Below the pieces are notes generated by a model, which was given only the letters and a program-made list of their open reading frames with translations, had not been told where the DNA came from and made no database searches. From NCBI GenBank assembly GCA_900088475.1, contig FLMG01001143.1, positions 25,156 through 89,155 of the forward strand: a stretch of DNA of 64,000 nucleotides, in the 5' to 3' direction. Made by a program: the position numbers and the translations under genes. Below, one piece after another: positions 2,686 to 63,438 of this stretch. Numbering within the stretch: the stretch's first letter is position 1; every line of letters starts with the position of its first letter. Origin of the DNA: Hyphochytrium catenoides. Its lineage: Eukaryota; Protista; Hyphochytriomycota.

Positions 2686-5117
2686 AAGAGACGCGCAACG
2701 AGCAATCGCCCGATCTGCCGCTAGGTAAGGGCTATCCTTGATCGATGCTAATTGGCAAAAACAACCACAGGCTTAGTCAGGGCAGCAACGCTTTTGAGAC
2801 AAACTGGTAAACTAAGTTCCCAGTGACGCTGGCAGTCAGACCTCAACCTTCACTCACGTCAAAGACAACTCGGCTTGCAGTCAGCGCAAAGACTGATTAC
2901 TTTGCGAACTTCTAGTCCTTCAATAAAATTAGCTTTTGCCGCAGTGAATAGTTCCAAGCTTCGGAGTAAACCTCAGCTCGTAAGAAGACAACAGTCCTAG
3001 CAGATTTGCTGAGTGGTGCAGTTCCTGCAGTACTCTTGCCCACAGCGCAGCGCCACAAAGAAAGAACCTCCTGAGGCAGTTCCAGCGATTTGTAGGGCAT
3101 CAGAAGATCGAGGACTGGCGCGAAACCCGAGATCCATCACCTCACTCAACTTCAAAAAAAGCAGATCACCTTTTCCCCTAGGGCTGTGGGGCTACGTCTA
3201 GCGTTAGGATGAATGCAGGTGATAAGCTTCCCACTGGGTAGCCGAGGGGTGGGAGGCTGATGTACGTTGAAACGACTACTCTTGGGCCACCTTACTGACA
3301 ATGTTCTTTGGTTCCTCCTGGCCCTGAGAAAAGGGGCCAATGAGCCCTAACTGAAGCTTCCGTAAGCTTTGGGTAGTCTGAGGGGTATGTTTCCCTAGCG
3401 TGAAGTCCATGCTAATGATCTTAGAAATCTCTTCCCACCCACCGTATTACTTGAGATGGGATTGCGATTGAACTCATATAGTTAAACACCTCATGCAAAC
3501 TAGTGTTATTCCGGAATAAACTTGTTCGAATTGAGAATCATCAGGATGGATGGGGCCTGAGGATAGCATTCTGCTTCCACATCTGATTCTGAACCATCCT
3601 CTCTCTACCTTCTGCACCATCCCTTCCTTTCCCTTCCTTGACCCTTTTGCCCTTTACCGCCTTTCCGTCCAGATGGCCCTGCCGTAGGGAGGGAAATAGG
3701 GGAGGGAAGGGGGGGGGGTAGAACTTCGTAGTACAGATGCTTGATGTCTCCCTGGTTCAGACCCTTCCTCCTCCTCCTCCTCCCTTCTCCCCTGTCAAGC
3801 TGTCGAGCTCCTGTTTTCCTCTTCTTTGTCAAGTTTCTTCTAAGATAAGAGGAGCAAGCGAAGGAGGAGGGGAGCAGGGAGAGACAAGAACGACGAGGTT
3901 ACAGTAATATACTGCTTGAGTAATTAAAGTTTATTAGTTGTTGTTCTAACAACTTCCACCACCAGCATGGCATGCAAAAGAAGCACCAGGAAGACAACCC
4001 ACTCAGTATCCGCTAAATAGGGTTAAATCTGAGCGGCCGAAGGCGGTGGCGCTGCGCCACCCGGGATTTTGTAGAAAGTACAGCCAAGAAGAGGAAAGAC
4101 CCAGCGTGGCGATGGAGACCACTCTGTTTCACTCTCTTCTAAGAATGTTGTACGAGTACTGTAGAGAAGAGTAACCTCTCGCTGAGTGACCCCACCGCGG
4201 ACTTATCATCGGACTGACTTAGTCTCTGATAACTCAGTGCTACAATAATCTACACTGGTCTCTACTGTGCTTCCTCAGTTATGTTCTCTATCGTGCGCTA
4301 CGGTACCAACTCTAAGTGCTATTGTTGGTTCTCTCCCGAATGCTCCACGGTTGCTTCAGCCTCGCGCTGGTTCTTGCCTAGTAAGACTGAGAGTGGCTCC
4401 TTGTGAGCAACTTCTGATCTCATTAAATATAGAAAGATCTTGTTTGTCTAGTTGCTGAAGAGCGATCGTGTTAGCAACGTTATCGACCGCTGCTAAGGCG
4501 GACGTGACATGATACTCGAAGATGATAGAGCGTCTTCTTCATCATCAAGGTGGGACAACGAAGAAGCAGAAGAGAACTTATACAACGTGAGAGACATTTT
4601 TCTAAATAGATGGAGTTCTGAAAAGAACGTGAAGCTTGGGAGGCGCGACCCTTTTTCCTTTAGATTTGCTTCTGGTGCCTCTCAGTCCAACTCTATGGTG
4701 CAGGAGATTGACCTGCATTAAACGAAGACCTTTTTAAAAAGACACAGACCATTATGGCTGTAAACAATTACTAATGATGGTGCTTTACATCGGTTGGGAA
4801 TGGCGAGGAGGAATAGGAGAAGACATCCGTTTGTCCATTTTTTTTTAAAACAATTATGAGGAGTACCACCAGATATATAACAACCCAAAAGGGCCAAAGC
4901 AGTGGGAAACTTGCTAATTGGATAATACTATAGTGAAAGGGAGGTCCAAGACAACGACTCAATCAAAGCCCACAGACATTATGCCTCCTCCTTGTTTTCC
5001 TTGAATGGCATGCGAACGCAACCAATGCCCGCTTCCTATGGAATANNNNNNNNNNNNNNNNNNNNNNNNNNNNNNNNNNNNNNNNNNNNNNNNNNNNNNN
5101 NNNNNNNNNNNNNNNNN

Positions 5118-32296: not shown

Positions 32297-33549
32297 ACCC
32301 ACGCGCTAGCTGGTAGACTACGCGAGCGATGGCCAACGATTCGCCATGGACGAGTCAAGGAACTACCATGGAGCTATGGGGCTTGGGTTGACGATGAGAG
32401 TCTATTCTGGAAAGGATATCTTAGCAGGGAGGAAGTAAGGAAAAACCTTTTGCCGGTTGGAGTTGCAGTCGGCGGGGAGATGTCAGGGAGAGGTATACGA
32501 AAGCACAAGAGGTTCAGAAGTCGAATTCTCCTTTAATATTTATTATCACGAGGCGGTCCATTGCTGACCCTTCAATTCGAAATGTAAATGATTGGGTCGT
32601 TTCTGGCTTTGGTGCCAGCGGCAAGCGGCAGCGACGGCATAGTGAAGACTGAGAGAATAGGAAAGAAGCCTACTACTACTATGAGAGACCGCGCTCTTAG
32701 TTCAACCTTGAAGCTAACGACTCTTTCTCTATCTGCTGTACAATCTGTGAATGACCTGGCTAGCTCCATCCGTCCACGGAAGGATGAGGTTCAAACAATG
32801 CCTGTTTAGACCTCGAAACGTTCATGTCGTAGACTTGACTTTTCTGATAAATGACTTGACCTTTCGTGTTGAAGAAACGAATACCTACCGCGACCGTAGG
32901 TTCTGGAGCCCATCCCGCACAGTCAAACGAGTCCATCTTTTGGAGGGTGACTTTTAGTGCTCGACGACTATCACTGTTCCGGCCTACAGAGAACAGAGAA
33001 ATCTTCACTAATAATAACAATGCCCTATTATAATTGAAGAAGGATGCAAGTGAGAGCGGTGAGTGTGACGGACGCTGGGTGGCAATGCTGATGATGTGTA
33101 CAAGTACGCAAAGAAGAGTTGTTTTGTAGTAGTAAATTAGCTTGTATTCGTGAAGTGAGAAAGAACAGACAAACATACACACACGCAAAACTCTTGTTGT
33201 TTGTAAAGGAGACTGATAAGAAAGCGGCCAAGTGTGGCAGATGATGAGGAGATACATGTTCCATTCATAGAGACACGAGATCTGGCTTATCTATGATTGA
33301 GGCTGATGTGGGAGGAACTGATCCGCAGGTGTGCCGTGCCTTCCAAGAGTGCTCATTGCTCCAGAGATACTAACAGCTTATTAGCAGCCTGACGCACTGA
33401 GAAAACGACCAGCTGACTGCTTTGAGCTCTCAATGAGAACATTCGACTGTGCGTGACATCCTTCTGATATACGCTCAAGCGCCAACAACTGCGTTCCGAA
33501 GCGGGCATCTTAGGCGCATCGATTACGGTCGGCAGTCGCGTAACCTGTG

Positions 33550-34845
33550 ATGGGCTCAGATTCTGTCCCTCCTGCCCTTTCAATACCGGCTGAAGGCGAA
33601 CAGTCCTCTCCATCCTGCTCTGCAGTGACAGACTTCAAGGCAGCCCTACCTCCCATCAACGTTTATCATGAGCCGATACAGTCGCTAGAAGAGTACCTCA
33701 ATCACTTGGAGCTGGATAACCTTCTAGCGGATGAGACTAGGAATTTGGTAAATGAGAAGGCGCAGCAGCTAAAGACTATATCCAACCTGAGTGCCCTGCT
33801 GGCTGGCTTTACAACGATGAATGTGGTGCAAATCAACCTTACTGGCTCGGAGCCTGAGTGGGTGATGATCTGCTTTGGCGTAACAGCCTCAATTGGAGTA
33901 AGATTTCAGCCAATGGCTCCTCATCCCAGACACTTTTCACATCTTTTGATATCTGAGTTCTGCTACTAGAGTCATCATCCTCACGGACATTGCTCCAACC
34001 ATGTCGCCGTCCTTCTCTTCACAAGCGGCCTCCGCCATTGTCACGTAGACAGCCCTTGTTCAACTCTGTAAGCTTAGTTCTCTTCGCATGGTGTCCCTCT
34101 CCTGCTTTAAGTATCAATGTCCTTCTCAAACTAATTCTCTGTCCTTTCTGAACTATGCAGACCGGGCTTTTGCTGCTAGCAATGGTCAGCTGCTCCCTGA
34201 TCCTTGTTGGGGTCTACCGCTATGATTGCAAGAAGAGAGAGGTACCCTTTGAAGAGTTTTGGAAAAAGAGGTTCGTGCTTCTTTGAACTACTGCCCTTCT
34301 TGAAGCGATACGACTAACTGAGGTAACGTCTTCTGCGGGACAGGTGTGAAGGCGACTTTCGGACAGCCTTTGTCTACTTCTCTTGGGGTGAGTACTTTGA
34401 GCATACTGCGGTGTGTGGAGTTCGTCTTCTGTGACCGGTTACACCACTACTCTTCGTCTACAATGGTCCCACCGTTATAGACTCTAGTTTGCCTATTCCT
34501 ATTCATCGCACTGTTCCCACTGTCTGTCCGCAGGCCGTTCTCTTCTCGCATGACTAATCCTCCTATTTCATCACTGCAGGGGTACCATGCTTTCTCCTCA
34601 ACTTCATATTCTGTGGCGTTATTGTTTACAGAGCCTCCCTGCCAACCATCATCACCACCTCTGCCATCTCAGTTCTCTCTTTGGTAATCTGGTGGTTCAG
34701 GGTAGAGAGTAAATGGAGCGGCTTCCTCACATCCTCAAACTCCAACTTACGGCATCATGTGCCTGCTCAGCCCTCTGGGGAAGACTATTTGCACGGGGAA
34801 ACTCCCAAAAGGAGGAAGTTCAGTGAGCAGGAAAAGAACCCTTGA
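33550..34845 (+). CDS. Orai-family Ca2+ channel subunit, paralogue A (selectivity-filter Glu replaced by Gln)
   Basis: Four exons (33550-33897, ~34161-34270, ~34344-34387, ~34580-34845). TM1 QLKTISNLSALLAGFTTMNVVQINL aligns to Orai1 [25 protein letters not shown]. Loop FEEFWKKRCEGDFRTAF, TM3 WGVPCFLLNF, then TM4. Confidence 0.85.
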
Positions 34846-34938
34846 TATTGACGTTATGAAGCCTCAAGTAAGGTTTAGCCGGTCATCGGCCCTCTGTTGT
34901 GGTATCCCACGTCCTGTTAAGGACGAAGCAATGCGCTA

Positions 34939-37419
34939 TTACTTAGAGCCAACGACACTGCTAAGTATATCCCGGATACCCTTAACTTTGCCAGCAAGAG
35001 AGGAGTCGAAAACCGTACAAACAAGGCCCTTCAGGAATTGGAAACCCTTAGAAGAAACTGGGTACTGCAGAGGGCCTGGAATTGATGTGCGAATGAATGG
35101 GAAGATATCTTGCACCACGCTCTTCTGCAAGCACACATCACGTAGCCCTTCGTGTCCAGCAAAGCGTCCGAAGCCTGAATTCTTCACTCCCCCAAACGGT
35201 AAGGACTGAACCATGTAGTACGTGGCGAAGTCGTTGAGGGCTGTCATTCCACATCTTAGTCCGTTGCCCAGCCTTTCCTGTCTCCTTCTGTTCTCTGAGA
35301 AGACAGAAGAGCCAAGTCCATAGTTGCTGTCATTGGCAAGGCGGAGGAGCTCTTCATCGTTCTTAACCTTGATAATTGACATAACTGGTCCAAACACCTC
35401 CTCCTTGGCTATCCTCATATCAGGCGTTACCTGCGATGTTATTGTGAGGGAGGTTGTCAGATATCTATCTAGTATTTAGCTTACCTAGCGGGGACTTGTG
35501 TCTGAAGAAATGGATAACAAAGAGCGTAACCTTTCGTTGGAAGGGAGGTGAAGGTGATGGAGAGAGGATTTCGCCTTATCAAAGGCATGAAAGAGACCTA
35601 GCAGGACAAGAGGAAGCGTGGAGAAGACAGAAAGCAGCTGATACTCACATCAGCCAATACCGTAGGTAGATAAAACAACCCTTTCAAAGCCTCGTTCCTC
35701 TTTCCGCCAGCCAGCAGCTTGGCACCGCGCTGTACAGCATCATCCACCAGCTCCTGAATGATCTGCAGCTGGGCCGGCATCACCATAGCTCCCATATCAA
35801 CAGTCTCTTTCCCAAGGGGATCGCCTTGGCGTAGCTTTTTGACCACCTCGGTTACTTCCGAAAGAAACTCTTCATAAATCTTCTCGTATACGAAGACACT
35901 GCAATGTTATCATCGCCCAGAAGTGAGACAGATATGGCTTTAAAGATTCCCAAGAGTAGATCACTCTACCCAAGACAGGCATATAAGCAAGGTAAGGCTC
36001 TCTAGTGACTCACTGCCCCCTCTGTCTCTCTCTCTTAAGGCAAGCTTGACTCCACTGTTCTAGACGACACCTACCGTTCAATACCCACACAATTCTGGCC
36101 ACAGTTTTGATATACGCCGCGCAGAATCACTGGTACAACCGTAGAAAGGTGGGCATCCTCGCAGATTACAGCTGGATCTTTGCCTCCCAACTCCAACGTG
36201 ACAGGCGTGAGTGACTGGGCCGCCCTGCCCATTACCAGCTTTCCTACCTAACAGACAAGTCGAAGGGGTCAGTGCGGGAAGCCAGATAACATTGTAGCAA
36301 CGAGGGCCTCTAGTAAGGAAGACAGCTATCCTATCCAACCCCATAGAGCTGGGTGGTTTCAAGCCCCCTTCCACCTACACTTTTTTCAAACCGCCCATAT
36401 CTGCCTCCGTGCTTCTACAGTGAGTGTGCTGGCATCGGGACCCATCTCTAAGCATATCTGGTCCGTCAGCTATGATATCTTACCTGAGGAGATCCAGTAA
36501 AAATTACTTTGTCCACAGAGTCGATTAGGGCTTCGCCAGCCTCCGCAAAGCCAGTCACTGTGAGCACCAGGTCTGGGTTATGTCCAGTCGCCCGAAGTGC
36601 TTCAGCCACGAAGCGCCCATAGTACTGAGAACTCCAGGCCGTGTGTTCCGATACTTTGGCAACGATGGCATTGCCTGCGAACAAACAGGAGAGAACGTGC
36701 GTGATCCAGTTCTGGAATGGATAGTTCCAGGGTGCAATTGTGCCGATAACGCCCATGGGATGATACTCGACCCATGCACTTTTATAGATAGAGAGCAAGC
36801 CTGTGGGGCGATATTCTTGCTGGAGCGCTGCTTCTCCATGCCTAAGCAGGTATTCAACCTTTGCAAAGACAACCAGAACTTCACCAAACATAGCGTCAAC
36901 CTTCGTCTTTCCTGAGTCTCTGCACGCAACCCGAACAATGTCATCTTGATGCTCTGCGATATATTTGGCAATGGTTGCTATAACACGGCGTCTCTCGGCG
37001 AAAGTAGTTTGACTCCATTCCCGTTGAGCAACCCGCGCTCGGCTCACCAATTCTTTGACTTCATCTCTTGTCATCGCCTTGACCTCGCCGATGCGCCTCA
37101 AGGTGCTTGGATTGTAACACTGAATCATGTCCGGCCTTGTTTCCAGCTTGAGCGGCATATCTGGGTTTGCATCTTCTTCAGCGGCGTCATCACGGCTCTC
37201 GAGCTCCTGCAGGGGGACCGAGACCGAAGGTACCCGCTGCTCTGGAGATAGAAAGAGCAGGCGCTTGAGCAACAAGATTGCCACAAGGGCCACCACACCT
37301 CCCGCGATCCATTGGCTGTGCTCAAAGACGAGCACGGATAGCTCGGCAAAGGCGTTTTCGAGTAAGGTGCGGGAAGATTCTGACAGGATGCACGCAGACA
37401 AGCAAATGAAAACCATCAT
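34939..37419 (-). CDS. Aldehyde dehydrogenase, ALDH22A1/MSC7-like, with N-terminal hydrophobic anchor
   Basis: [31 protein letters not shown], catalytic [43 protein letters not shown]-terminal [17 protein letters not shown]. Confidence 0.92.
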
Positions 37420-38161
37420 TGCGTGGTTAAGCAACCAACTGGTTGGTGATTGAAACAGGCAAATGAGCCCAGACGACTGAGTCACGGCAAGCTTCAGATA
37501 ATCGTCTCGTCCGGTGAGGCGATGGCGCCACTATCCTTGAAGCCTTTATTCTTGAGTGCGTCCTAGGCCGCTGACCTTCCTCCTCTGAGTAAAGGCCTTT
37601 ACTTTCTTGTCGACAGATTCTGAGGTGTGGGGCCAGCGCAGAAGTTTGGACCAGCTTCGCGCCTTCTTTTTCGTCTTCTACCCTAATATAAGGAAGCTTG
37701 AATTATAATCGGTTAGGACCTCTAGTTTTGGTAAATAGCTCAACTCTGTCTACTGAGAGCTGATTGAGAGTACAGTAGTGCCACAAAAAGTATTCTCCGC
37801 CGCAGCACTTCGTCTTACAAGGACTGTCAAAGCGGTTATTGATTCGTAATCTCGGCTATATCCCTGCTGTAAGCTGACCATTCGGACAGTCCCTGGAAAA
37901 GAGCCTTACCGTTACCGGTACGGCATGGCCTTGTTGTTCCCACTGCGGAAAAGTGAAGGGAAGCGGGATGTTGGCCCTAGTTGGGCAGCAGGCTGGACGT
38001 GATGAGTCTTCGTCTGGAAGCTTCGCAACGCATCCTTCCAAGGGCATCTTCCCATATCGTGTGCCTTCCTCCTCCATGCTGCAGGGTAGAAACTGAGGTT
38101 AATAGCCTTAAGGAAAAGATCCTGTTATACTAGGTCTACAGCTGGCAGGGGGCTGGGCATA

Positions 38162-39719
38162 ATGCTGGCGGGCCTCTTCAATAGTCTCGGGTTCAGCAAG
38201 GAAGCGGAGGAGCAGGAGAATCGCCGTTCCTCCATAGCGGAAGATGGAGAGGATGCTAGACCCCGGTCGACTACCTCTTCCATCGAAGGCAGTGACTGGT
38301 CGTCTTTCGGTGCTCAGCTTCGCCGCCGTCGCGGAACGAGCATAGCGCATTCAGAGATGGCCAAGTTGGAATCGGAAAGAAGAAGAGACGAAGAAGAGAC
38401 GGCCCAGCGTACCCTGGAGCTAAAGATAGAAACGCGCCTGGTTGACGAGACTCGAAAGGAGATCAATGACCGCGCTCAGCAATTGAAGACGGTTTCGACT
38501 CTCTCTGCCCTTCTTGCAGGATTTACGACGACGAACATGGTAGAGATTAGCTTTCCAGAAGACCTATCAACCTGGATGTACCTTCTTTTCGGCGTAACTG
38601 CTGCCGTAGGGGTAAGTGAGCACTATCAGGAGGGAAATAGAGGCTGCGACCAGGACAGCGACATTGATCAGAATGGTTTGAGACGATATCCGTGGCAGAA
38701 GAGGTTTCGGACAAACAGTTGGATCAGTACAGACGGTAGATGGAAAGTATGATGCCTCTAGGAGCAGGTGGAAGCAAAGACTTAAGGCTAATGAGCTTCT
38801 TGTCCAGATGAGCCTGCTGGTGCTAGCGATGGTCAAGAGTTCCCTGATGCTTGTAGGAGTCATGCGCTACGACTGCAGAAAGCGTGACGTGCCTTTCGAA
38901 GAGTTCTGGAGGAAAAGGTAGACCGCAAGAATAGCGAAGCAAAGTGTGGCGTGGAATGGATCGCCTCTCTCCCTCTCAGTCGAGCTTCTTCTTGATATCT
39001 CTCTTGCTTCTCTCATGACCTTGCCTCTTCTTCCCTCTTTCTATCGTGTATATATTTCATTGACCTACAAGTGATAGGTTATTTGGTCACTAAACTCATT
39101 GGTCCTCCCTGTGTGGTTCTCTTTTTCTTCTCTTCTCTCTGTGGCTCTTTCGCGGTCTGGTGACGAAGATGTGAGGACGATTTCCGTGAAGCGTTTAGCT
39201 ACTTCTCATGGGGTAAGAATGCCCTTTCTCCTCTTTGTGTCAGAAGTAGGAGTGATTTGCTATTGGTCCAGCCTCTTATGAAGCATCACTATCTCTCACT
39301 CTTTCTCTACTACGCTTGTTACGTGCAGCTAGGGTTGTTCTTGATTGTCTCCTTTACTTTGATCGACATACCGTGTGCTAATATGTTCTGATCCTGCGGC
39401 ATTGATGTATTGCGGTTTTTACGCAGGTGTGCCCTGCTTTGTCGCGAACTTCGCAATCTCAGGCTCCATCGTCTATCGAAACTCCTTGATCACTACCCTC
39501 GCGGCCATTGCAATCGCTGCTCTCACTCTGGTTGTGTGGTGGATTCGCCTCCAATCAAAGTGGAAAGGATTCCTCACCTCGTCGACAGGTGACCTCTTTA
39601 TCAGACTCCCACATAGAACTTCTATGATGAGAGAACGCGAAACGCCTAGTCCTCTCAGGACCTCTCCTGGACAACCTGGAGTGTCTATCTCCTCCCAGAT
39701 CTCTGCGCCCACAAATTAG
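38162..39719 (+). CDS. Orai-family Ca2+ channel subunit, paralogue B (selectivity-filter Glu intact)
   Basis: Four exons (38162-38611, ~38808-38917, ~39169-39212, ~39427-39719), with introns at the same positions as paralogue A. TM1 QLKTVSTLSALLAGFTTTNMVEISF; FEEFWRKRCEDDFREAFSYFSWGVPCFVANF. Confidence 0.88.
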
Positions 39720-40015
39720 AAGATAAAGCACGCTGAGATTTACTTCGAGGAAAGAAGGTCTGTGATTAGATAGTCTTAGGGCTGATGCTTTACTGTCTGG
39801 TAGGTTGACTTTTGGAGCTAGTCCTGCAAGGGCAAAGTCCTACTTTGAAGGGTTTCCTGTCCCTGTCCCTGTCCCGGGACTTTCTTTTTCTGCAATGTCA
39901 ATACGGCTTCCCGTTTCTCCTTTGGGCTTTCCCGTAATGTTGGCACTATTATCTGTGTGTCAGCGCTTACTAGAGGTACGGACTAACCCCTTGTCTGTCT
40001 GTATAGGTGTAACTC

Positions 40016-50002: not shown

Positions 50003-51352
50003 CTAAAACTGTTCAACGTCAGGTAGTTCGGGAAGAAAAGTGCGTGCAATGCGGCTCGGAGCTGCTTCCCTATCCTTTTCAGCTCTAGGCCTTCCTTTAG
50101 AGAGTCCAAGTGGTGGATTGGCTGGTCGACCAGGGTCGGAAGAAGATCTAAGGCGCTGAAGAATGCTGTCCGCGAAGGCTGCAAGCTCCACGCCATCGTC
50201 TAAGAGCTTCTGAGCACATCGTGCAAGCTCCTTTCGTAGCCGCTTCACATCCTATTTTGATGAAGAGGCAGCCATCAAGGCAAATCGAGACAGATGGCTG
50301 TAAGCAACAGATTGCGGACCTCAAAGAAGCATCATACTAGAAAGCGAGGGTCACAAAATGAGAGATGCAGACCCTCTAACGGATCTCACGAGGCATTGGA
50401 TCGTTGCCTACCTCTTGGCCGGATTTGAGCTCCGCTACGAGAACAGCATCAATCCCGTCTAGCAGGAGCTTCTCAAGTTGTCCTACCAGCTGAGCGAGCT
50501 GGCCCTTCACTGTCGCTACCTCAGGTACTGTCTAGAAGGCGTAAAGATGTCAAGAGAAGAAGACGAAGGGTCCATTAGACAAACGTTGGGCCCATAATTA
50601 CAGAGTAAAGCCGTTCCCTTACGAGCANNNNNNNNNNNNNNNNNTCAGCTTGGCTTTCTCTCTCTCTTCATGCCCGGAGAAAGCAGTGACCTCCTCAGAA
50701 TGTTCGTGGAAGCCCGCAAGCTCTTCCTTGTCCTCTGCTGCCAGTGAGCTTTGAGAGGAGTTCTTGCGATTCATCCGCCACAGGCCTATGCGTAGGATCA
50801 CTTTAGGTCGGCAGCGTAGAAGAGGCTTGGGCAAAAAACAAGAGATACAATCTTGAGTAGCTTTGTAAAGCCTAATAAGAGGAAGATGCAGATGCTGAGA
50901 GTAAGAAGCCAGGAAAGGTTTGAGAAAGGAATGGACTCACCACGTTGTTGCTCCTGAGTAGGAGTAAGCAGTCCCTCAAAGTGGCTGGTCATCTCAGAGA
51001 CACTCTTTCGCTTGTTGATCTCTGGAGTCCTTTGCCTTTGGAAGTCGGGATGCTCAGAAGCACCCGCCGCCACCTCCTGGACCACCTTCTGTGCGGAACG
51101 TGGCCGACGGGCTGTTGGCGGCCCTTTCTCTTCGAAGAACTGCCTACTTTCTAAGGACTTAGTCCTCGGCAAAGGGGCGGGAGGGGGAGGCGAGATCCGG
51201 CCAGTTTTGAAGCTACTTGCTCTTGCTTGAACGCTAACCTCGGCTTCTGAGGAAGTAAGGTGCACATTCTGGACCTGGGTTTCGTCACCCACTTCATTTT
51301 CTATGGCTCTCCTCCTCCTGGCGAGGATTTCTGCTAGTTCTGAGGAGGCCAT
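50003..51352 (-). CDS. Pro-rich protein with C-terminal BAG-like domain
   Basis: Exon 1 reads MASSELAEILARRRRAIE...PPPPAPLP. Later spliced exons give VKGQLAQLVGQLEKLLLDGIDAVLVAELKSGQE|DVKRLRKELARCAQKLLD, resembling BAG helices 2-3. An N gap lies at 50628-50644. Confidence 0.6.
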
Positions 51353-54106: not shown

Positions 54107-55141
54107 TCAGCCATCAGCATCGAGAGAATCATCAAGTGCACTTCGTAACGCCTCCACAGAGAGCAGCCAAGGCCGCAACAGCAGAGGACGCTGATGTGGG
54201 GGTAAGAAAGAGCGTAGAAAGATGTTGGGAGACAGTTAAGCCCTAGCTAATATTAGAGGGTCAACTCACACACTCCCTCCTATCGAATCTAGAACAACCG
54301 CCCTTTTTCTATCCCTCATTCTGACCAGAACCACCTCCCTAACGTGTGTCAATTCGAGAAGGATCTAGACCTTTCTATAGTAAGTAATAACATATTTTTG
54401 GGCGATGGTTAACCTGTCAATGAGGGTTTTGAAAGGGTCTCCAGCCCCTTCTTCAAATCCAGCTGAAAGATNNNNNNNNNNNNNNNNNNNNNNNNNNNNN
54501 NNNNNNNNNNNNNNNNNNNNNNNNNNNNACCTATAAACTTTCAAATATGAAGTGTTATGGAAATGTTCGCGAAGAAATTTCTTCGTGTGTATCTTTGAAT
54601 CTGTGTGAGTGCGTATTCTCAGTGGGATCACCAAAGTATTGCCTCACAAGGTGACAGGAAGAGAAAGAATTCAACATTGAAGAGGGCGAGACAGAGTGAG
54701 CTAGAGGCAGCGCAAGGGAGAGAGAGAGAGAGAAAGTCTCCAGAATGACGAAGAAGAGTCAAACATCAGGCGAAGTAACCGGTTGCCAGTGAAGACGTAA
54801 GGTGGAGAGCGCATGAAGGAAAGGTCTGGAACAGGAGAACAGAGGCAACTGCTTGGAAAGCAGCTGGATCTTCGACCCTTGAAATGATGGCTAGATGACC
54901 ACCTTGATTAGCTCTAAGCCCATGGTTCACCCGATCGGCTTCCGGGCCAGCAAGGCCCATGATTCGAAGTAGCCATTAGCGGATCAAAGGAGGCAAGCCG
55001 AGCACTGGGATGGCAGAGGTCCTCCCGAAGGGCAGCCCCCACAATATCCCGACAACCCTGGGCAAATAGAGGGAGCGTGGATTGAGGCCCAAAGCGAGAC
55101 GAACATAGAGCCCATAACAACGAGGCCCATAGCAAAGACAA
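54107..55141 (-). CDS. Possible small multi-exon hypothetical protein
   Basis: AG/GT-bounded segments (~54600-54531, ~54460-54371, ~54190-54107) give SKIHTKKFLREHFHNTSYLKVYR...DPFKTLIDRLTIAQKYVITYYRK|RPLLLRPWLLSVEALRSALDDSLDADG*. Interrupted by an N gap; the 5' part is unresolved. Confidence 0.3.
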
Positions 55142-55342: not shown

Positions 55343-57435
55343 TCATGCCCTTTGGAAGAAAGCTTCAACTTTCTTGATCTGATTCTGAAGCTTCTCCACG
55401 GTGGCCGAGTCTGCGTTATCATCCAGCCAATCCCTAACCTCAAGCACCTTCTCCTGCACTGAGGTATTTCCTGTCTCCCGTGCCGCGGAAAGGGCGTGGT
55501 AGATGAGCGTCTCCAGCTCATTCTTTGCCTCCATTTTCTTCACTAACTCCTCGTCCTCCTCTTTGAACCGTTCACTCTCGCGCACCATTCTCTCAATCTC
55601 TTCCTCCGTCAATCTCCCTCTATTATTGGTGATGGTTGTAGAAGCTTGCGCCCCGGTGATCTTATCCTTGGCTCCGACATGTAGGATGCCGTTTGCATCA
55701 ATGTCAAAGGTCACCTCAATCTGGGGCTCCCCTCTCTTCGCCCTCTGAATGCCTGAAAATTGGTCCATCGTTAGAAAGGAAGTCGGAAGTGATGAGAGGT
55801 GCCAACAAGAAGCACCACTCGACTCTCTCCTTCTTTAGCGCAGCTCTATTTTGGCCACCTACCTGAAATGGTAAATTCTCCTAGCTTATTATTAGCATCC
55901 ACACAAGCTCTCTCGCCTTCATAGACTACGACATCAACAGCCGTCTGGTAGTCCTCCTCTGTCGTATAGACCTTTGTCTTCCGCACAGGAATCGGTGTGT
56001 TCCTTTTAATGAGCGTGGACATCATCCTTCCTGTCGTCTCAATACCCAGCGACAGTGGTGTCACATCTACAAGAAGGAGCGCACTCGTCGCTTGAGCGGT
56101 TACGCCGCCCAAGATCGCCCCTTGCACTGCTGCGCCGTAGGCCACAGCCTCGTCCGGGTTGATGCTCCTGCAAAGTTCCTTGCCCCCAAAGAAGTCAGAC
56201 AGAAGTTGCTGGACTTTAGGGATACGAGTTGAACCGCCAACGAGTACTACGTCAGAAATGTCTGAGGTTTGCATCTTGGCATCGTTTAATACATTCTTTA
56301 CTGTCTCCAGACAGCGCTCAAAGTGCAGAGCGTTAAGCTGCTCGAATTTGGCTCGAGAAAGAGAGAGATGGAAGTCGAGGCCCTCGATGAGAGAGTCCAC
56401 CTCGATAGTAGCACTGGTGCTGGTGGATAGCATTCGCTTGGCAGACTCTGAGACAGGAGACAATGAGAATGAGCGCAGGGTAAGCTCCTTTTAAGTGGAT
56501 AAGGTTGAAAGACAGCGCAGAAGAATGACGAAAGGCAAGAGTTGTCAACGAATGATGAGAGTCCACACAAGAATGATGCGACCGCCAAAGAGTGGACAAG
56601 GTGGAAGATAGCGGCTTCAAAGTGTTGAGAGATCGAAGCAAATCCCTGACTCATTGAATCCGAAGCGCATTGCGATATCAGTTAGAGCATGTGACAGGAG
56701 GTAGGATAGCAAGGACTCCTACCACATGAAGCTCTCAGTCTTCTCAGTGCTCTAGCGCTCTTGGCGGGGTCTACTCCGTTGTTTTTCCTCTTGAAATCGG
56801 CTATACAATACTCGATGAGACTGTTATCGAAGTCTTCTCCGCCGAGATGAGTATCTCCTCCCGTCGCCTTGACCTCAAAAATTCCCTCGGTTATATTAAG
56901 GATGGAGACATCGAAGGTGCCTCCTCCTAGATCAAAGATGAGGACGTTGGTTGATTTGCCGCTGTCAGCGCCTCCTTTGTCAAGTCCGTAAGCTAGAGCA
57001 GCAGCAGTGGGCTCGTTGATGATGCGCTTTACATCCAGTCCAGAAATAGCGCCTTGCATATAATATCAAGTGACTTTAGGTCTCGAGTACANNNNNNNNN
57101 NNNNNNNNNNNNNNNNNNNNAGAGAGAGGGAGAGGGAGAGAGAGAGAAGGAGAGGAAGCTCACCGGCGTTCTTCGTCGCCTGTCTCTGCTGGTCATTGAA
57201 GTACGCTGGGACGGTCACCACAGCCGATTTGATGGGCTGGCCAAGGAATGCCTCAGCTGTCTCCTTCATCTTGTGCAGGACCATTGCGGAGATTTCTTCG
57301 GGCGAAAACCGACGGGTCTTACCTCTAAACTCTACCTGGAGCGACAGGGCGAGGATGAGGAGAAGAAGGTGAATGAGGAGAGGAATGGAGAGAAGGTGGG
57401 TTTGTATATGGGCAAAAGGGACGAGAAAGACAGAC

Positions 57436-62925: not shown

Positions 62926-63438
62926 NNNNNNNNNNNNNNNNNNNNNNNNNNNNNNNNNNNNNNGAGAGAGAAAGAGAGAAGAGAGAGAGAGAGACAGAGA
63001 GAGAGGGAGAGAGAGAGAGAGAGAGAAAGGAAGGGAGAAAGAGTGAGAAAAGAGAAAGAGAGAAACAGACACAGACAGAGAGAGAGAGAGAGGAAATGCC
63101 TTGGCACACATCTTCCTGTATGTTCTTTGTAGGTGAAAGAGAGACAGAGAGACGGTTGTTACCCCTCACCTTTCGCTTTGCCTGTTAACTCTTTGGACTC
63201 TTCTTTTTCGGCTTGGCGGGCACGTGCTGAGTGAGTAGGAGGGAAGCATAGATGAGGACAAACAGACGAGCGAGCTGTCAGTATGGCAGGGAAGAGAGAA
63301 AGGATTGACGATGCACGAGAGAGAGAGAAAGAGAGAGTATAACAGGGACAGCTCTGCGCGCGGGAGAGGGAGCGGTGCGTGCGCTCGTAAGAGAGAAGAT
63401 TAGGGGAAAGAAAGAGAAAGGGTGTGTGCGTGTATGCT

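What the first reader, a model, noticed from the sequence alone, without database searches (positions are those of the whole stretch)
33550..39719. Orai paralogue pair: one with intact filter (Glu), one natural E106Q - a candidate built-in channel/inhibitor system
Seen: two same-strand Orai genes 3.3 kb apart, both with intact four-TM reading frames. At the position of human Orai1 E106, copy B has GAG/Glu (38543-38545, ...GFTTTNMVE) and copy A has CAA/Gln (33829-33831, ...GFTTMNVVQ). Copy A shows no frameshift or stop, and its protein motifs are conserved despite diverged introns, so it does not look like a pseudogene. Known: E106 forms the Ca2+ selectivity ring of the Orai hexamer, and E106Q is non-conducting and dominant-negative. 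Inference: copy A is an endogenous inhibitory or tuning subunit that co-assembles with copy B, or it forms a channel of different selectivity. I know of no description of such a pair.
Basis: partly seen in the sequence, partly recalled or inferred. Interest (0 to 1): 0.88.

Follow-up and report, generated by a model that had tools for sequence, protein, structure and literature searches.

The report
Orai channel pair: Glu and Gln
Two neighbouring, intact genes for Orai-type calcium-channel subunits differ at the residue that makes animal Orai channels calcium-selective (Glu in one, Gln in the other); the Gln copy is clearly kept by selection. Such Gln/Asn copies turn out to be common in non-animal Orai proteins, so this is one more case of a widespread class that I did not find described in the papers I could search.

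Summary
Copy A (33550-34845, 255 aa) and copy B (38162-39719, 298 aa) are intact four-exon Orai genes (Pfam PF07856) with identical intron positions. At the human Orai1 E106 position, A has CAA/Gln and B has GAG/Glu.

A is not a sequencing error or a pseudogene:
- CAA stands in contigs of three DNA runs from two samples.
- All five variants in A's coding sequence are silent.
- Synonymous sites between A and B are saturated, while dN is 0.34.
- A keeps family-conserved residues as well as B does and shows no rate acceleration.
- A and B are sister genes, so the change was Glu to Gln after an old local duplication.

The pair is not unique. Among 124 strictly aligned Orai relatives from 1.8 billion representative proteins, 25 carry Gln and 15 Asn. 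These include named proteins of Selaginella, Sphagnum, Chara and Chlorella. Selaginella, Diphasiastrum and Sphagnum hold Glu-type and Gln-type paralogues in one genome.

I found no paper describing this. Whether A inhibits or tunes B, or conducts by itself, could not be tested, and no RNA run was listed. The scan holds one sister note on copy B at this same place (s1-347961) and none on other DNA.

The parts
33550..34845 (+). Orai copy A (Gln type), 4 exons: 33550-33897, 34161-34270, 34344-34387, 34580-34845; 255 aa
   Evidence: The gene model has GT..AG introns and an open frame. It matches Pfam PF07856 at E 3e-23. The AlphaFold model has four long helices, and its top 11 PDB matches are all Orai structures.
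33829..33831 (+). CAA = Gln94 of copy A, at the position of human Orai1 E106 / Drosophila E178
   Evidence: Read directly from the sequence. The long contigs of runs X1, X2 and X3 that cover it show no difference there.
33817..33819 (+). ATG = Met90 of copy A, at the position of the hydrophobic gate V102 of human Orai1
   Evidence: Gapless alignment of TM1. At this column the family has mostly Val (87 of 135).
38162..39719 (+). Orai copy B (Glu type), 4 exons: 38162-38611, 38808-38917, 39169-39212, 39427-39719; 298 aa
   Evidence: Gene model. Pfam PF07856 at E 2e-22. Aligned to Drosophila Orai chains 6BBF and 4HKR.
38543..38545 (+). GAG = Glu128 of copy B, the canonical selectivity-filter glutamate
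38531..38533 (+). ACG = Thr124 of copy B, a polar residue at the V102 gate position
   Evidence: Only 7 of 92 acid-filter relatives have a polar or small residue here.
34939..37419 (-). Intervening multi-exon aldehyde dehydrogenase gene on the opposite strand. It is context only and not part of the Orai pair.
   Evidence: Four exon ORFs match Pfam PF00171 in collinear order, with E from 2e-44 to 5e-12.

Best explanation
Shown: copies A and B descend from one old local duplication of a Glu-type Orai gene, and both are still kept by purifying selection. After the duplication, copy A replaced the outer-ring glutamate of pore helix TM1 by glutamine. Everything else that defines an Orai subunit stayed in place. 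A thereby joins a widespread class of non-animal Orai proteins with Gln or Asn at this position, which I did not find described.

Inferred: A is a working pore subunit that forms Orai-type hexamers without the high-affinity Ca2+ site. Such a pore would have a different selectivity or conductance from B's, and A can probably act on its own. A and B have very similar TM1 helices and all animal Orai paralogues mix, so mixed A/B channels are likely wherever both are expressed. In them A would dilute B's Glu ring and so lower or retune Ca2+ entry. I take this tuning as a probable side of its function, not as its sole purpose.
For: A is real and constrained:
- Intact four-exon frame with the same three intron positions as B.
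- CAA is present in contigs of three DNA runs from two samples, which differ from the window elsewhere.
- All five variant sites in A's coding sequence are silent. The chance of that is about 6e-4.
- Between A and B, pS is 0.80 (saturated) and dN is 0.34. Third codon positions are 39% identical, second positions 77%.
- A keeps 18 of 23 strongly conserved family positions, B keeps 17.
- No rate asymmetry: 20 A-specific against 18 B-specific changes versus the family consensus. Tree branch lengths are 0.36 and 0.33.

Orai identity:
- Pfam PF07856.
- The model has four helices and its top 11 PDB matches are all Orai.

Direction of the change:
- A and B are sisters with support 100, and the nearest outgroups all carry Glu.

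Amide-filter Orai as a durable class that may act alone:
- 25 Gln and 15 Asn among 124 strictly aligned relatives, with at least 22 state changes.
- A conserved Gln clade runs from Chara and Closterium to Selaginella and Ginkgo.
- Saprolegnian oomycetes have two Asn-type paralogues each.
- The amide filter goes with remodelling of the gate position: 19 of 43 polar or small there, against 7 of 92 for acid-filter relatives.

Mixing is plausible:
- 23 of 28 TM1-region residues are identical between A and B (read).
- ORAI1 and ORAI2 form heteromers, and pore-dead mutants suppress the other isoform (PMC5355949).
Against: - There is no expression evidence. No RNA run was listed.
- There is no physiology for any amide-filter Orai.
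- In human and mouse Orai the same substitution gives no current at all (PMC5355949). A could therefore be a purely silent subunit.
- 'Only amide type retrieved' in some genomes is not proof that a Glu-type partner is absent. The searches were word-limited, and the list was cut at 120 of 154.
- Unlike many amide-type relatives, A keeps a bulky hydrophobic residue (Met) at the gate. The family-wide link between amide filter and loosened gate therefore does not apply to A itself.
- The counts are not corrected for shared ancestry.
Confidence: 0.5

Rival explanations
1. Obligate inhibitory or silent subunit. A never conducts by itself. Its only role is to co-assemble with B and shut down or scale Ca2+ entry. 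This would resemble engineered E106Q, or electrically silent modulatory subunits of other channel families.
For: - E106Q and the equivalent E80Q of ORAI2 are pore-dead and suppress the other isoform through heteromers. ORAI2 is a natural attenuator of ORAI1 (PMC5355949).
- A and B are sisters with near-identical TM1.
- Glu/Gln pairs recur within single genomes of Selaginella, Diphasiastrum and Sphagnum.
- In both independent pairs, the Glu partner has Thr at gate position 102 and the Gln partner has a hydrophobic residue there.
Against: - Long-lived clades, and several genomes, yielded only Gln- or Asn-type Orai: Closterium, Chara, Ceratodon, Physcomitrium, Chlorella, Coccomyxa and Aphanomyces species. 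This is hard to square with a class that works only as a poison of a Glu-type partner.
- There is no co-expression or interaction evidence.
Confidence: 0.3
2. A has left channel function altogether. It could be a scaffold or regulator in another membrane, in the way Jiraiya/TMEM221 is thought to derive from Orai without the Ca2+-binding residues.
For: - PMC7016017 describes Jiraiya as an Orai-derived family that lacks the Ca2+-binding residues.
- A lacks the filter Glu, and its tail shows no obvious STIM-type coiled coil.
Against: - A keeps the pore-lining TM1 motif (Leu, Gly-Phe, Lys87-equivalent) and the conserved TM2-TM4 residues as well as B does.
- A is no more diverged than B, unlike a protein that has changed its job.
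Confidence: 0.12
3. A is an unexpressed or decaying duplicate, or the CAA codon is an assembly error.
For: No RNA run could be listed. The gene model has no transcript support.
Against: - CAA stands in three runs from two samples.
- There are no stops or frameshifts, although synonymous sites are saturated.
- Five of five coding variants are silent.
- Conserved residues are retained and evolutionary rates are symmetric.
Confidence: 0.03

Closest known systems
Engineered Orai1 E106Q / ORAI2 E80Q / Drosophila Orai E180 mutants
   Same: The same residue of TM1 is changed from Glu to Gln. The subunit is otherwise intact and reaches the membrane (PMC5355949).
   Different: Those are laboratory mutants of STIM-gated animal channels. 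Here the change is natural, old and under selection. The pore also differs elsewhere: only one basic ring (the Lys87 equivalent), Asn or Thr at R91, and Met or Thr at V102.
Mammalian ORAI2/ORAI3 as natural modulatory partners of ORAI1
   Same: A paralogue that can mix into the hexamer and lower or reshape Ca2+ entry (PMC5355949; PMC7229178 listed).
   Different: ORAI2 and ORAI3 keep the filter Glu and conduct Ca2+ by themselves. Copy A lacks the Glu.
Gln-type Orai of streptophytes and green algae (for example Selaginella XP_024530886, Chara GBG63845, Sphagnum, Closterium, Chlorella, Coccomyxa) and Asn-type Orai of saprolegnian oomycetes
   Same: Natural Orai family members with an amide in place of the filter Glu. 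In lycophytes and Sphagnum they sit beside a Glu-type paralogue in the same genome.
   Different: The origin is independent, because A is sister to B and not to these clades. The plant pair is ancient and unlinked, whereas A and B are 3.3 kb apart. None of these proteins has a tested function that I could find.
Jiraiya/TMEM221
   Same: An Orai-derived four-helix protein without the Ca2+-binding residues (PMC7016017).
   Different: Jiraiya is a separate, strongly diverged, animal-only family (PF15038). A is a full PF07856 member, 63% identical to B in the core.
Electrically silent Kv subunits (Kv5, Kv6, Kv8, Kv9)
   Same: Cited from general knowledge. These are paralogous subunits that do not conduct alone but modulate channels by co-assembly. 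They are the conceptual model for the inhibitory reading.
   Different: They belong to an unrelated channel family. Their silence comes from assembly and trafficking, not from loss of the filter residue.

Membership tests
Orai family (Pfam PF07856) | Significant full-length match to the family profile | tested here: met
   A: E 3e-23, profile positions 4-171 of 173. B: E 2e-22, positions 3-171. Both are far above the 25-bit cut-off.
Orai family (Pfam PF07856) | Four transmembrane helices with a long TM1 extension, and a fold like Drosophila Orai | tested here: met
   The AlphaFold model of A has helices 44-94, 103-136, 146-183 and 188-225, with core pLDDT 70-90. Its top 11 Foldseek PDB matches are all Orai chains, with probability 0.92-1.00 and TM by target 0.48-0.71. 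The model was built from only two sequences.
Orai family (Pfam PF07856) | Conserved TM1 motif (Ser-Ala-Leu-Leu-x-Gly-Phe) with the filter residue seven positions after Phe | tested here: met
   Both copies read LSALLAGF followed by six residues and then the filter residue. The spacing is 7 in 129 of 130 relatives.
Ca2+-selective CRAC-type Orai channel | Glutamate ring at the E106 position | tested here: not met
   Copy A has Gln (CAA, 33829-33831). Copy B has Glu. A is therefore an Orai family member, but by this criterion not a canonical Ca2+-selective CRAC pore.
Ca2+-selective CRAC-type Orai channel | Hydrophobic gate (Val102) and basic inner pore (R91, K87, R83) | tested here: inconclusive
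   A has Met102 and B has Thr102. Only the K87-equivalent Lys is kept; position 91 is Asn or Thr and position 83 is Ala. Most non-animal relatives also lack R91 and R83.
Ca2+-selective CRAC-type Orai channel | Gating by STIM through a C-terminal coiled coil; STIM present in the genome | not testable with these tools
   The tails after TM4 share only a Ser-Lys-Trp-x-Gly-Phe-Leu motif and show no obvious Leu heptads. The rest of the genome cannot be searched. The scan notes mention no STIM gene.
Dominant-negative / silent modulatory subunit | Co-expression and co-assembly with the conducting paralogue, plus no current alone | not testable with these tools
   No RNA run was listed. No multimer prediction or physiology is available.
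Pseudogene | Disabling changes or neutral evolution | tested here: not met
   The frame is intact. dN is far below the saturated synonymous divergence. Five of five variants are silent. Rates are symmetric.

The most novel reading that the evidence does not exclude
Glu/Gln Orai pairs may be two-component channels in which each partner supplies what the other lacks. Here, and independently in land plants, the Glu-type partner has a polar Thr at the hydrophobic-gate position, which in human Orai1 makes a leaky, constitutively open pore. The Gln-type partner keeps a hydrophobic gate residue (Met here, Val in plants). If so, the working channel is an obligate heteromer with a mixed Glu/Gln ring. 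More broadly, amide-filter Orai would form a distinct functional class, with altered or even reversed charge selectivity, that the animal-centred literature has not noticed.
Probability: 0.15. Interest if true: 0.8.

Novelty: new variant of a known kind. Interest (0 to 1): 0.5.

Why it matters
Orai is known almost only from animal store-operated Ca2+ entry, where the E106 glutamate is treated as the defining and conserved residue. A 2024 review says it is conserved in many species and takes this as a sign of long-standing Ca2+ selectivity (PMC11506743).

The data here qualify that view. About a third of non-animal Orai clusters carry Gln or Asn instead. The switch happened many times. At least two lineages keep a Glu-type and a Gln-type paralogue side by side.

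The pair in this window is a compact, closely related and clearly selected example. Swapping one residue between two natural partners would test directly whether such subunits are silent inhibitors, tuners or channels of another selectivity. That in turn bears on what Orai proteins do in organisms that may lack STIM.

The value lies in the class more than in this one locus, and function remains untested.

Tried and rejected
Searches that gave nothing useful:
- The search for homologous proteins with copy A found nothing (993 word candidates, none significant). The exhaustive HMMER search was needed. Its best hit was only 1e-38, so no orthologue from a close relative is available and a branch-specific dN/dS could not be done.
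- RNA evidence: no run was listed. Only DNA contigs could be laid.
- The look-up of encoding contigs with A's exon-1 ORF: not on record.
- Collins and Meyer 2011 (PMC3175768) is not held.
- Six paper searches found no description of natural Gln/Asn Orai.
- The atlas search with the plant Glu-type protein did not say which species hold it.

Discarded analysis:
- The global-alignment 'identity' of introns is not meaningful with lenient gaps. It was replaced by blastn.

Rejected readings:
- Sequencing error.
- Pseudogene.
- A belonging to an ancient Gln clade (A and B are sisters).
- Misalignment of the filter column.

The organism was not identified (names are coded). Earlier scan notes call it single-celled.
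Full report
**What is there**

Reading 33400-39900 and splicing by GT..AG consensus and homology gives two same-strand genes.
- Copy A exons: 33550-33897, 34161-34270, 34344-34387, 34580-34845 (255 aa).
- Copy B exons: 38162-38611, 38808-38917, 39169-39212, 39427-39719 (298 aa).
- The three introns interrupt both genes at the same codon positions and phases. They differ in length: 263, 73 and 192 nt in A against 196, 251 and 214 nt in B.
- blastn between the genes aligns only exons 2 and 3, so the introns have no detectable similarity.
- A multi-exon aldehyde dehydrogenase gene lies between them on the other strand (PF00171).
- tblastn finds no third Orai copy in the window.

**Identity**

- Both proteins match Pfam Orai-1 PF07856 nearly end to end (E 3e-23 and 2e-22).
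- phmmer against PDB sequences aligns B to Drosophila Orai chains (6BBF, 4HKR). It puts B's ...TNMVEISF on the chain's ...AMVEVQL, so B's Glu128 falls on the filter glutamate, E178 in fly and E106 in human numbering.
- A aligns to B without gaps over 182 residues, which puts Gln94 (CAA, 33829-33831) on that position.
- An AlphaFold model of A, made from only two sequences (mean pLDDT 64, core 70-90), has four long helices. Gln94 is the last residue of helix 1.
- The model's eleven best PDB matches are all Orai structures.

**Is the Gln real and is the gene alive?**

- Contigs from three public DNA runs (two samples) cover the codon. In the long records, every difference from the window is accounted for elsewhere, and none touches 33829-33831.
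- The samples differ from the window at about 1% of sites, so at least one is an independent haplotype or strain.
- The five variant sites inside A's coding sequence are four synonymous third-position changes and one TGA-to-TAA change. With 23% of random changes silent, five of five has a probability of about 6e-4.
- Between A and B, synonymous sites are saturated (pS 0.80) while dN is 0.34. Third codon positions are 39% identical and second positions 77%. The duplication is therefore old, and both copies stayed under constraint throughout.
- A keeps 18 of 23 positions that are at least 70% conserved in the family, and B keeps 17.
- Relative-rate counts are symmetric: 20 A-specific against 18 B-specific changes versus the family consensus.
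- No RNA run could be listed, so expression is not shown.

**Where the pair comes from**

- A word-indexed search with A found nothing.
- An exhaustive HMMER search of 1.8 billion cluster representatives found 346 relatives. The best scored only 1e-38, so no close orthologue exists in public data.
- In a tree of 109 near-full-length relatives, A and B are sisters with support 100 and branch lengths of 0.36 and 0.33. Their nearest neighbours all carry Glu.
- Together with the shared introns and the 3.3 kb spacing, this means a lineage-specific local duplication of a Glu-type gene, followed by Glu to Gln in A.

**The wider picture changes the reading**

- In the filter column of the 150 best relatives, 87 have Glu, 27 Gln, 16 Asn and 5 Asp.
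- Requiring the conserved Phe and the exact seven-residue spacing gives Glu 79, Gln 25, Asn 15 and Asp 5 of 124.
- The state changed at least 22 times on the tree.
- Cluster look-ups name Gln-type proteins in Selaginella, Closterium, Chara, Sphagnum, Chlorella, Coccomyxa and Apatococcus. They name Glu-type proteins in Volvox, Tetraselmis, Ostreobium and Psilotum.
- A search seeded with the Selaginella protein shows both types in one genome: Selaginella has two Gln-type and one Glu-type; Diphasiastrum has two Gln-type and one Glu-type; Sphagnum troendelagicum has one of each.
- For Closterium, Chara, Ceratodon, Physcomitrium and Ginkgo only Gln-type proteins were retrieved. That list was cut at 120 of 154, so absence of a Glu type is not proven.
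- In saprolegnian oomycetes, the four Aphanomyces species each yielded two Asn-type paralogues, and Saprolegnia, Achlya and Thraustotheca one each.
- Across the family, the amide filter goes with a polar or small residue at the V102 gate position: 19 of 43 against 7 of 92. Fisher's test gives p = 2e-6, not corrected for relatedness.

**An oddity of this pair**

- A combines Gln106 with a bulky hydrophobic Met at position 102.
- B combines Glu106 with Thr at 102, which is rare among acid-type proteins. This agrees with the scan's sister note s1-347961.
- The independent plant pairs show the same combination: Val102/Gln106 and Thr102/Glu106.
- Two cases prove nothing, but the pattern fits partners that complement each other.

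**Literature**

- E106Q and the ORAI2 equivalent are pore-dead and suppress the other isoform through heteromers. ORAI2 is a natural attenuator of ORAI1 (PMC5355949).
- A 2024 review states that E106 is conserved in many species and takes this as a sign of long-standing Ca2+ selectivity (PMC11506743).
- A diatom study notes retention of the glutamate in a divergent diatom clade (PMC11085791).
- Jiraiya/TMEM221 is described as an Orai derivative without the Ca2+-binding residues (PMC7016017).
- Six searches found no description of natural Gln- or Asn-type Orai or of Glu/Gln pairs. The library is incomplete, so this is absence of evidence only.

**Mechanism**

Shown: A is a constrained Orai subunit with Gln at the filter, derived from a Glu-type ancestor.

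Inferred, with rough odds:
- About 0.5: A is a working pore subunit of the amide-filter class with altered selectivity or conductance. It can act alone and probably mixes with B when both are present.
- About 0.12: A has a non-channel role.
- About 0.03: A is decaying or an error.

The comparative data favour the first option over the second. Amide-type Orai persist for very long times, seemingly without Glu-type partners in several lineages, and they often remodel the gate as well. Human E106Q physiology and the recurrent same-genome pairs keep the second option alive.

**Verdict**

The case is not unique, but it belongs to a widespread class that I did not find described. I score interest at 0.5. 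The gene family and the effect of the residue are well known, the function is untested, and the specific locus is one of many. Even so, the class contradicts a textbook assumption, and this closely related pair is a convenient test system.

Noticed in passing
window 38531-38533 (copy B, Thr124): Copy B has Thr at the position of the hydrophobic gate V102. Only 7 of 92 acid-filter relatives have a polar or small residue there. From general knowledge, small or polar substitutions at this position in human Orai1 give constitutively open channels.
   Followed up: partly
P0039, P0238, P0288 (Selaginella); P0222, P0242, P0285 (Diphasiastrum); P0221, P0282 (Sphagnum troendelagicum): Land plants hold a Gln-type Orai (TM1 ...FAGFAVVTLTQF) and a Glu-type Orai (TM1 ...TSFTMTSPVEF) in the same genome. 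The Glu-type partner has Thr at gate position 102 and the Gln-type partner has Val, the same combination as in the window's pair. I found no paper mentioning it.
   Followed up: partly
P0112, P0330-P0341 (Aphanomyces, Saprolegnia, Achlya, Thraustotheca): In saprolegnian oomycetes the four Aphanomyces species each yielded two Orai paralogues, both with Asn at the filter position (...SIINVN...); Saprolegnia, Achlya and Thraustotheca yielded one Asn-type each. No Glu-type protein of these species was retrieved in that search.
   Followed up: partly
alignment of 150 Orai relatives: Family-wide, Gln or Asn at the filter goes with a polar or small residue at gate position 102 (19 of 43 against 7 of 92). 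This hints that amide-type Orai have a generally remodelled pore. The counts are not corrected for phylogeny.
   Followed up: partly
window 34939-37419, minus strand: A multi-exon aldehyde dehydrogenase gene (PF00171) lies between the two Orai copies. Its first exon encodes a hydrophobic N-terminal stretch of about 95 residues before the enzyme domain. It is convergent with copy A (about 90 nt between the stops) and divergent from copy B (about 740 nt between the starts).
   Followed up: partly
window 35448-35687: There is a dense run of differences and small indels between the window and sample S2 inside an intron of the aldehyde dehydrogenase gene. Overall divergence between the samples is about 1%, so at least two haplotypes or strains of this organism are in public data.
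   Followed up: no
window 5046-5117, 50628-50644, 54472-54528, 57092-57120, 62926-62963: Five short runs of N (assembly gaps) are present. None lies near the Orai genes.
   Followed up: no
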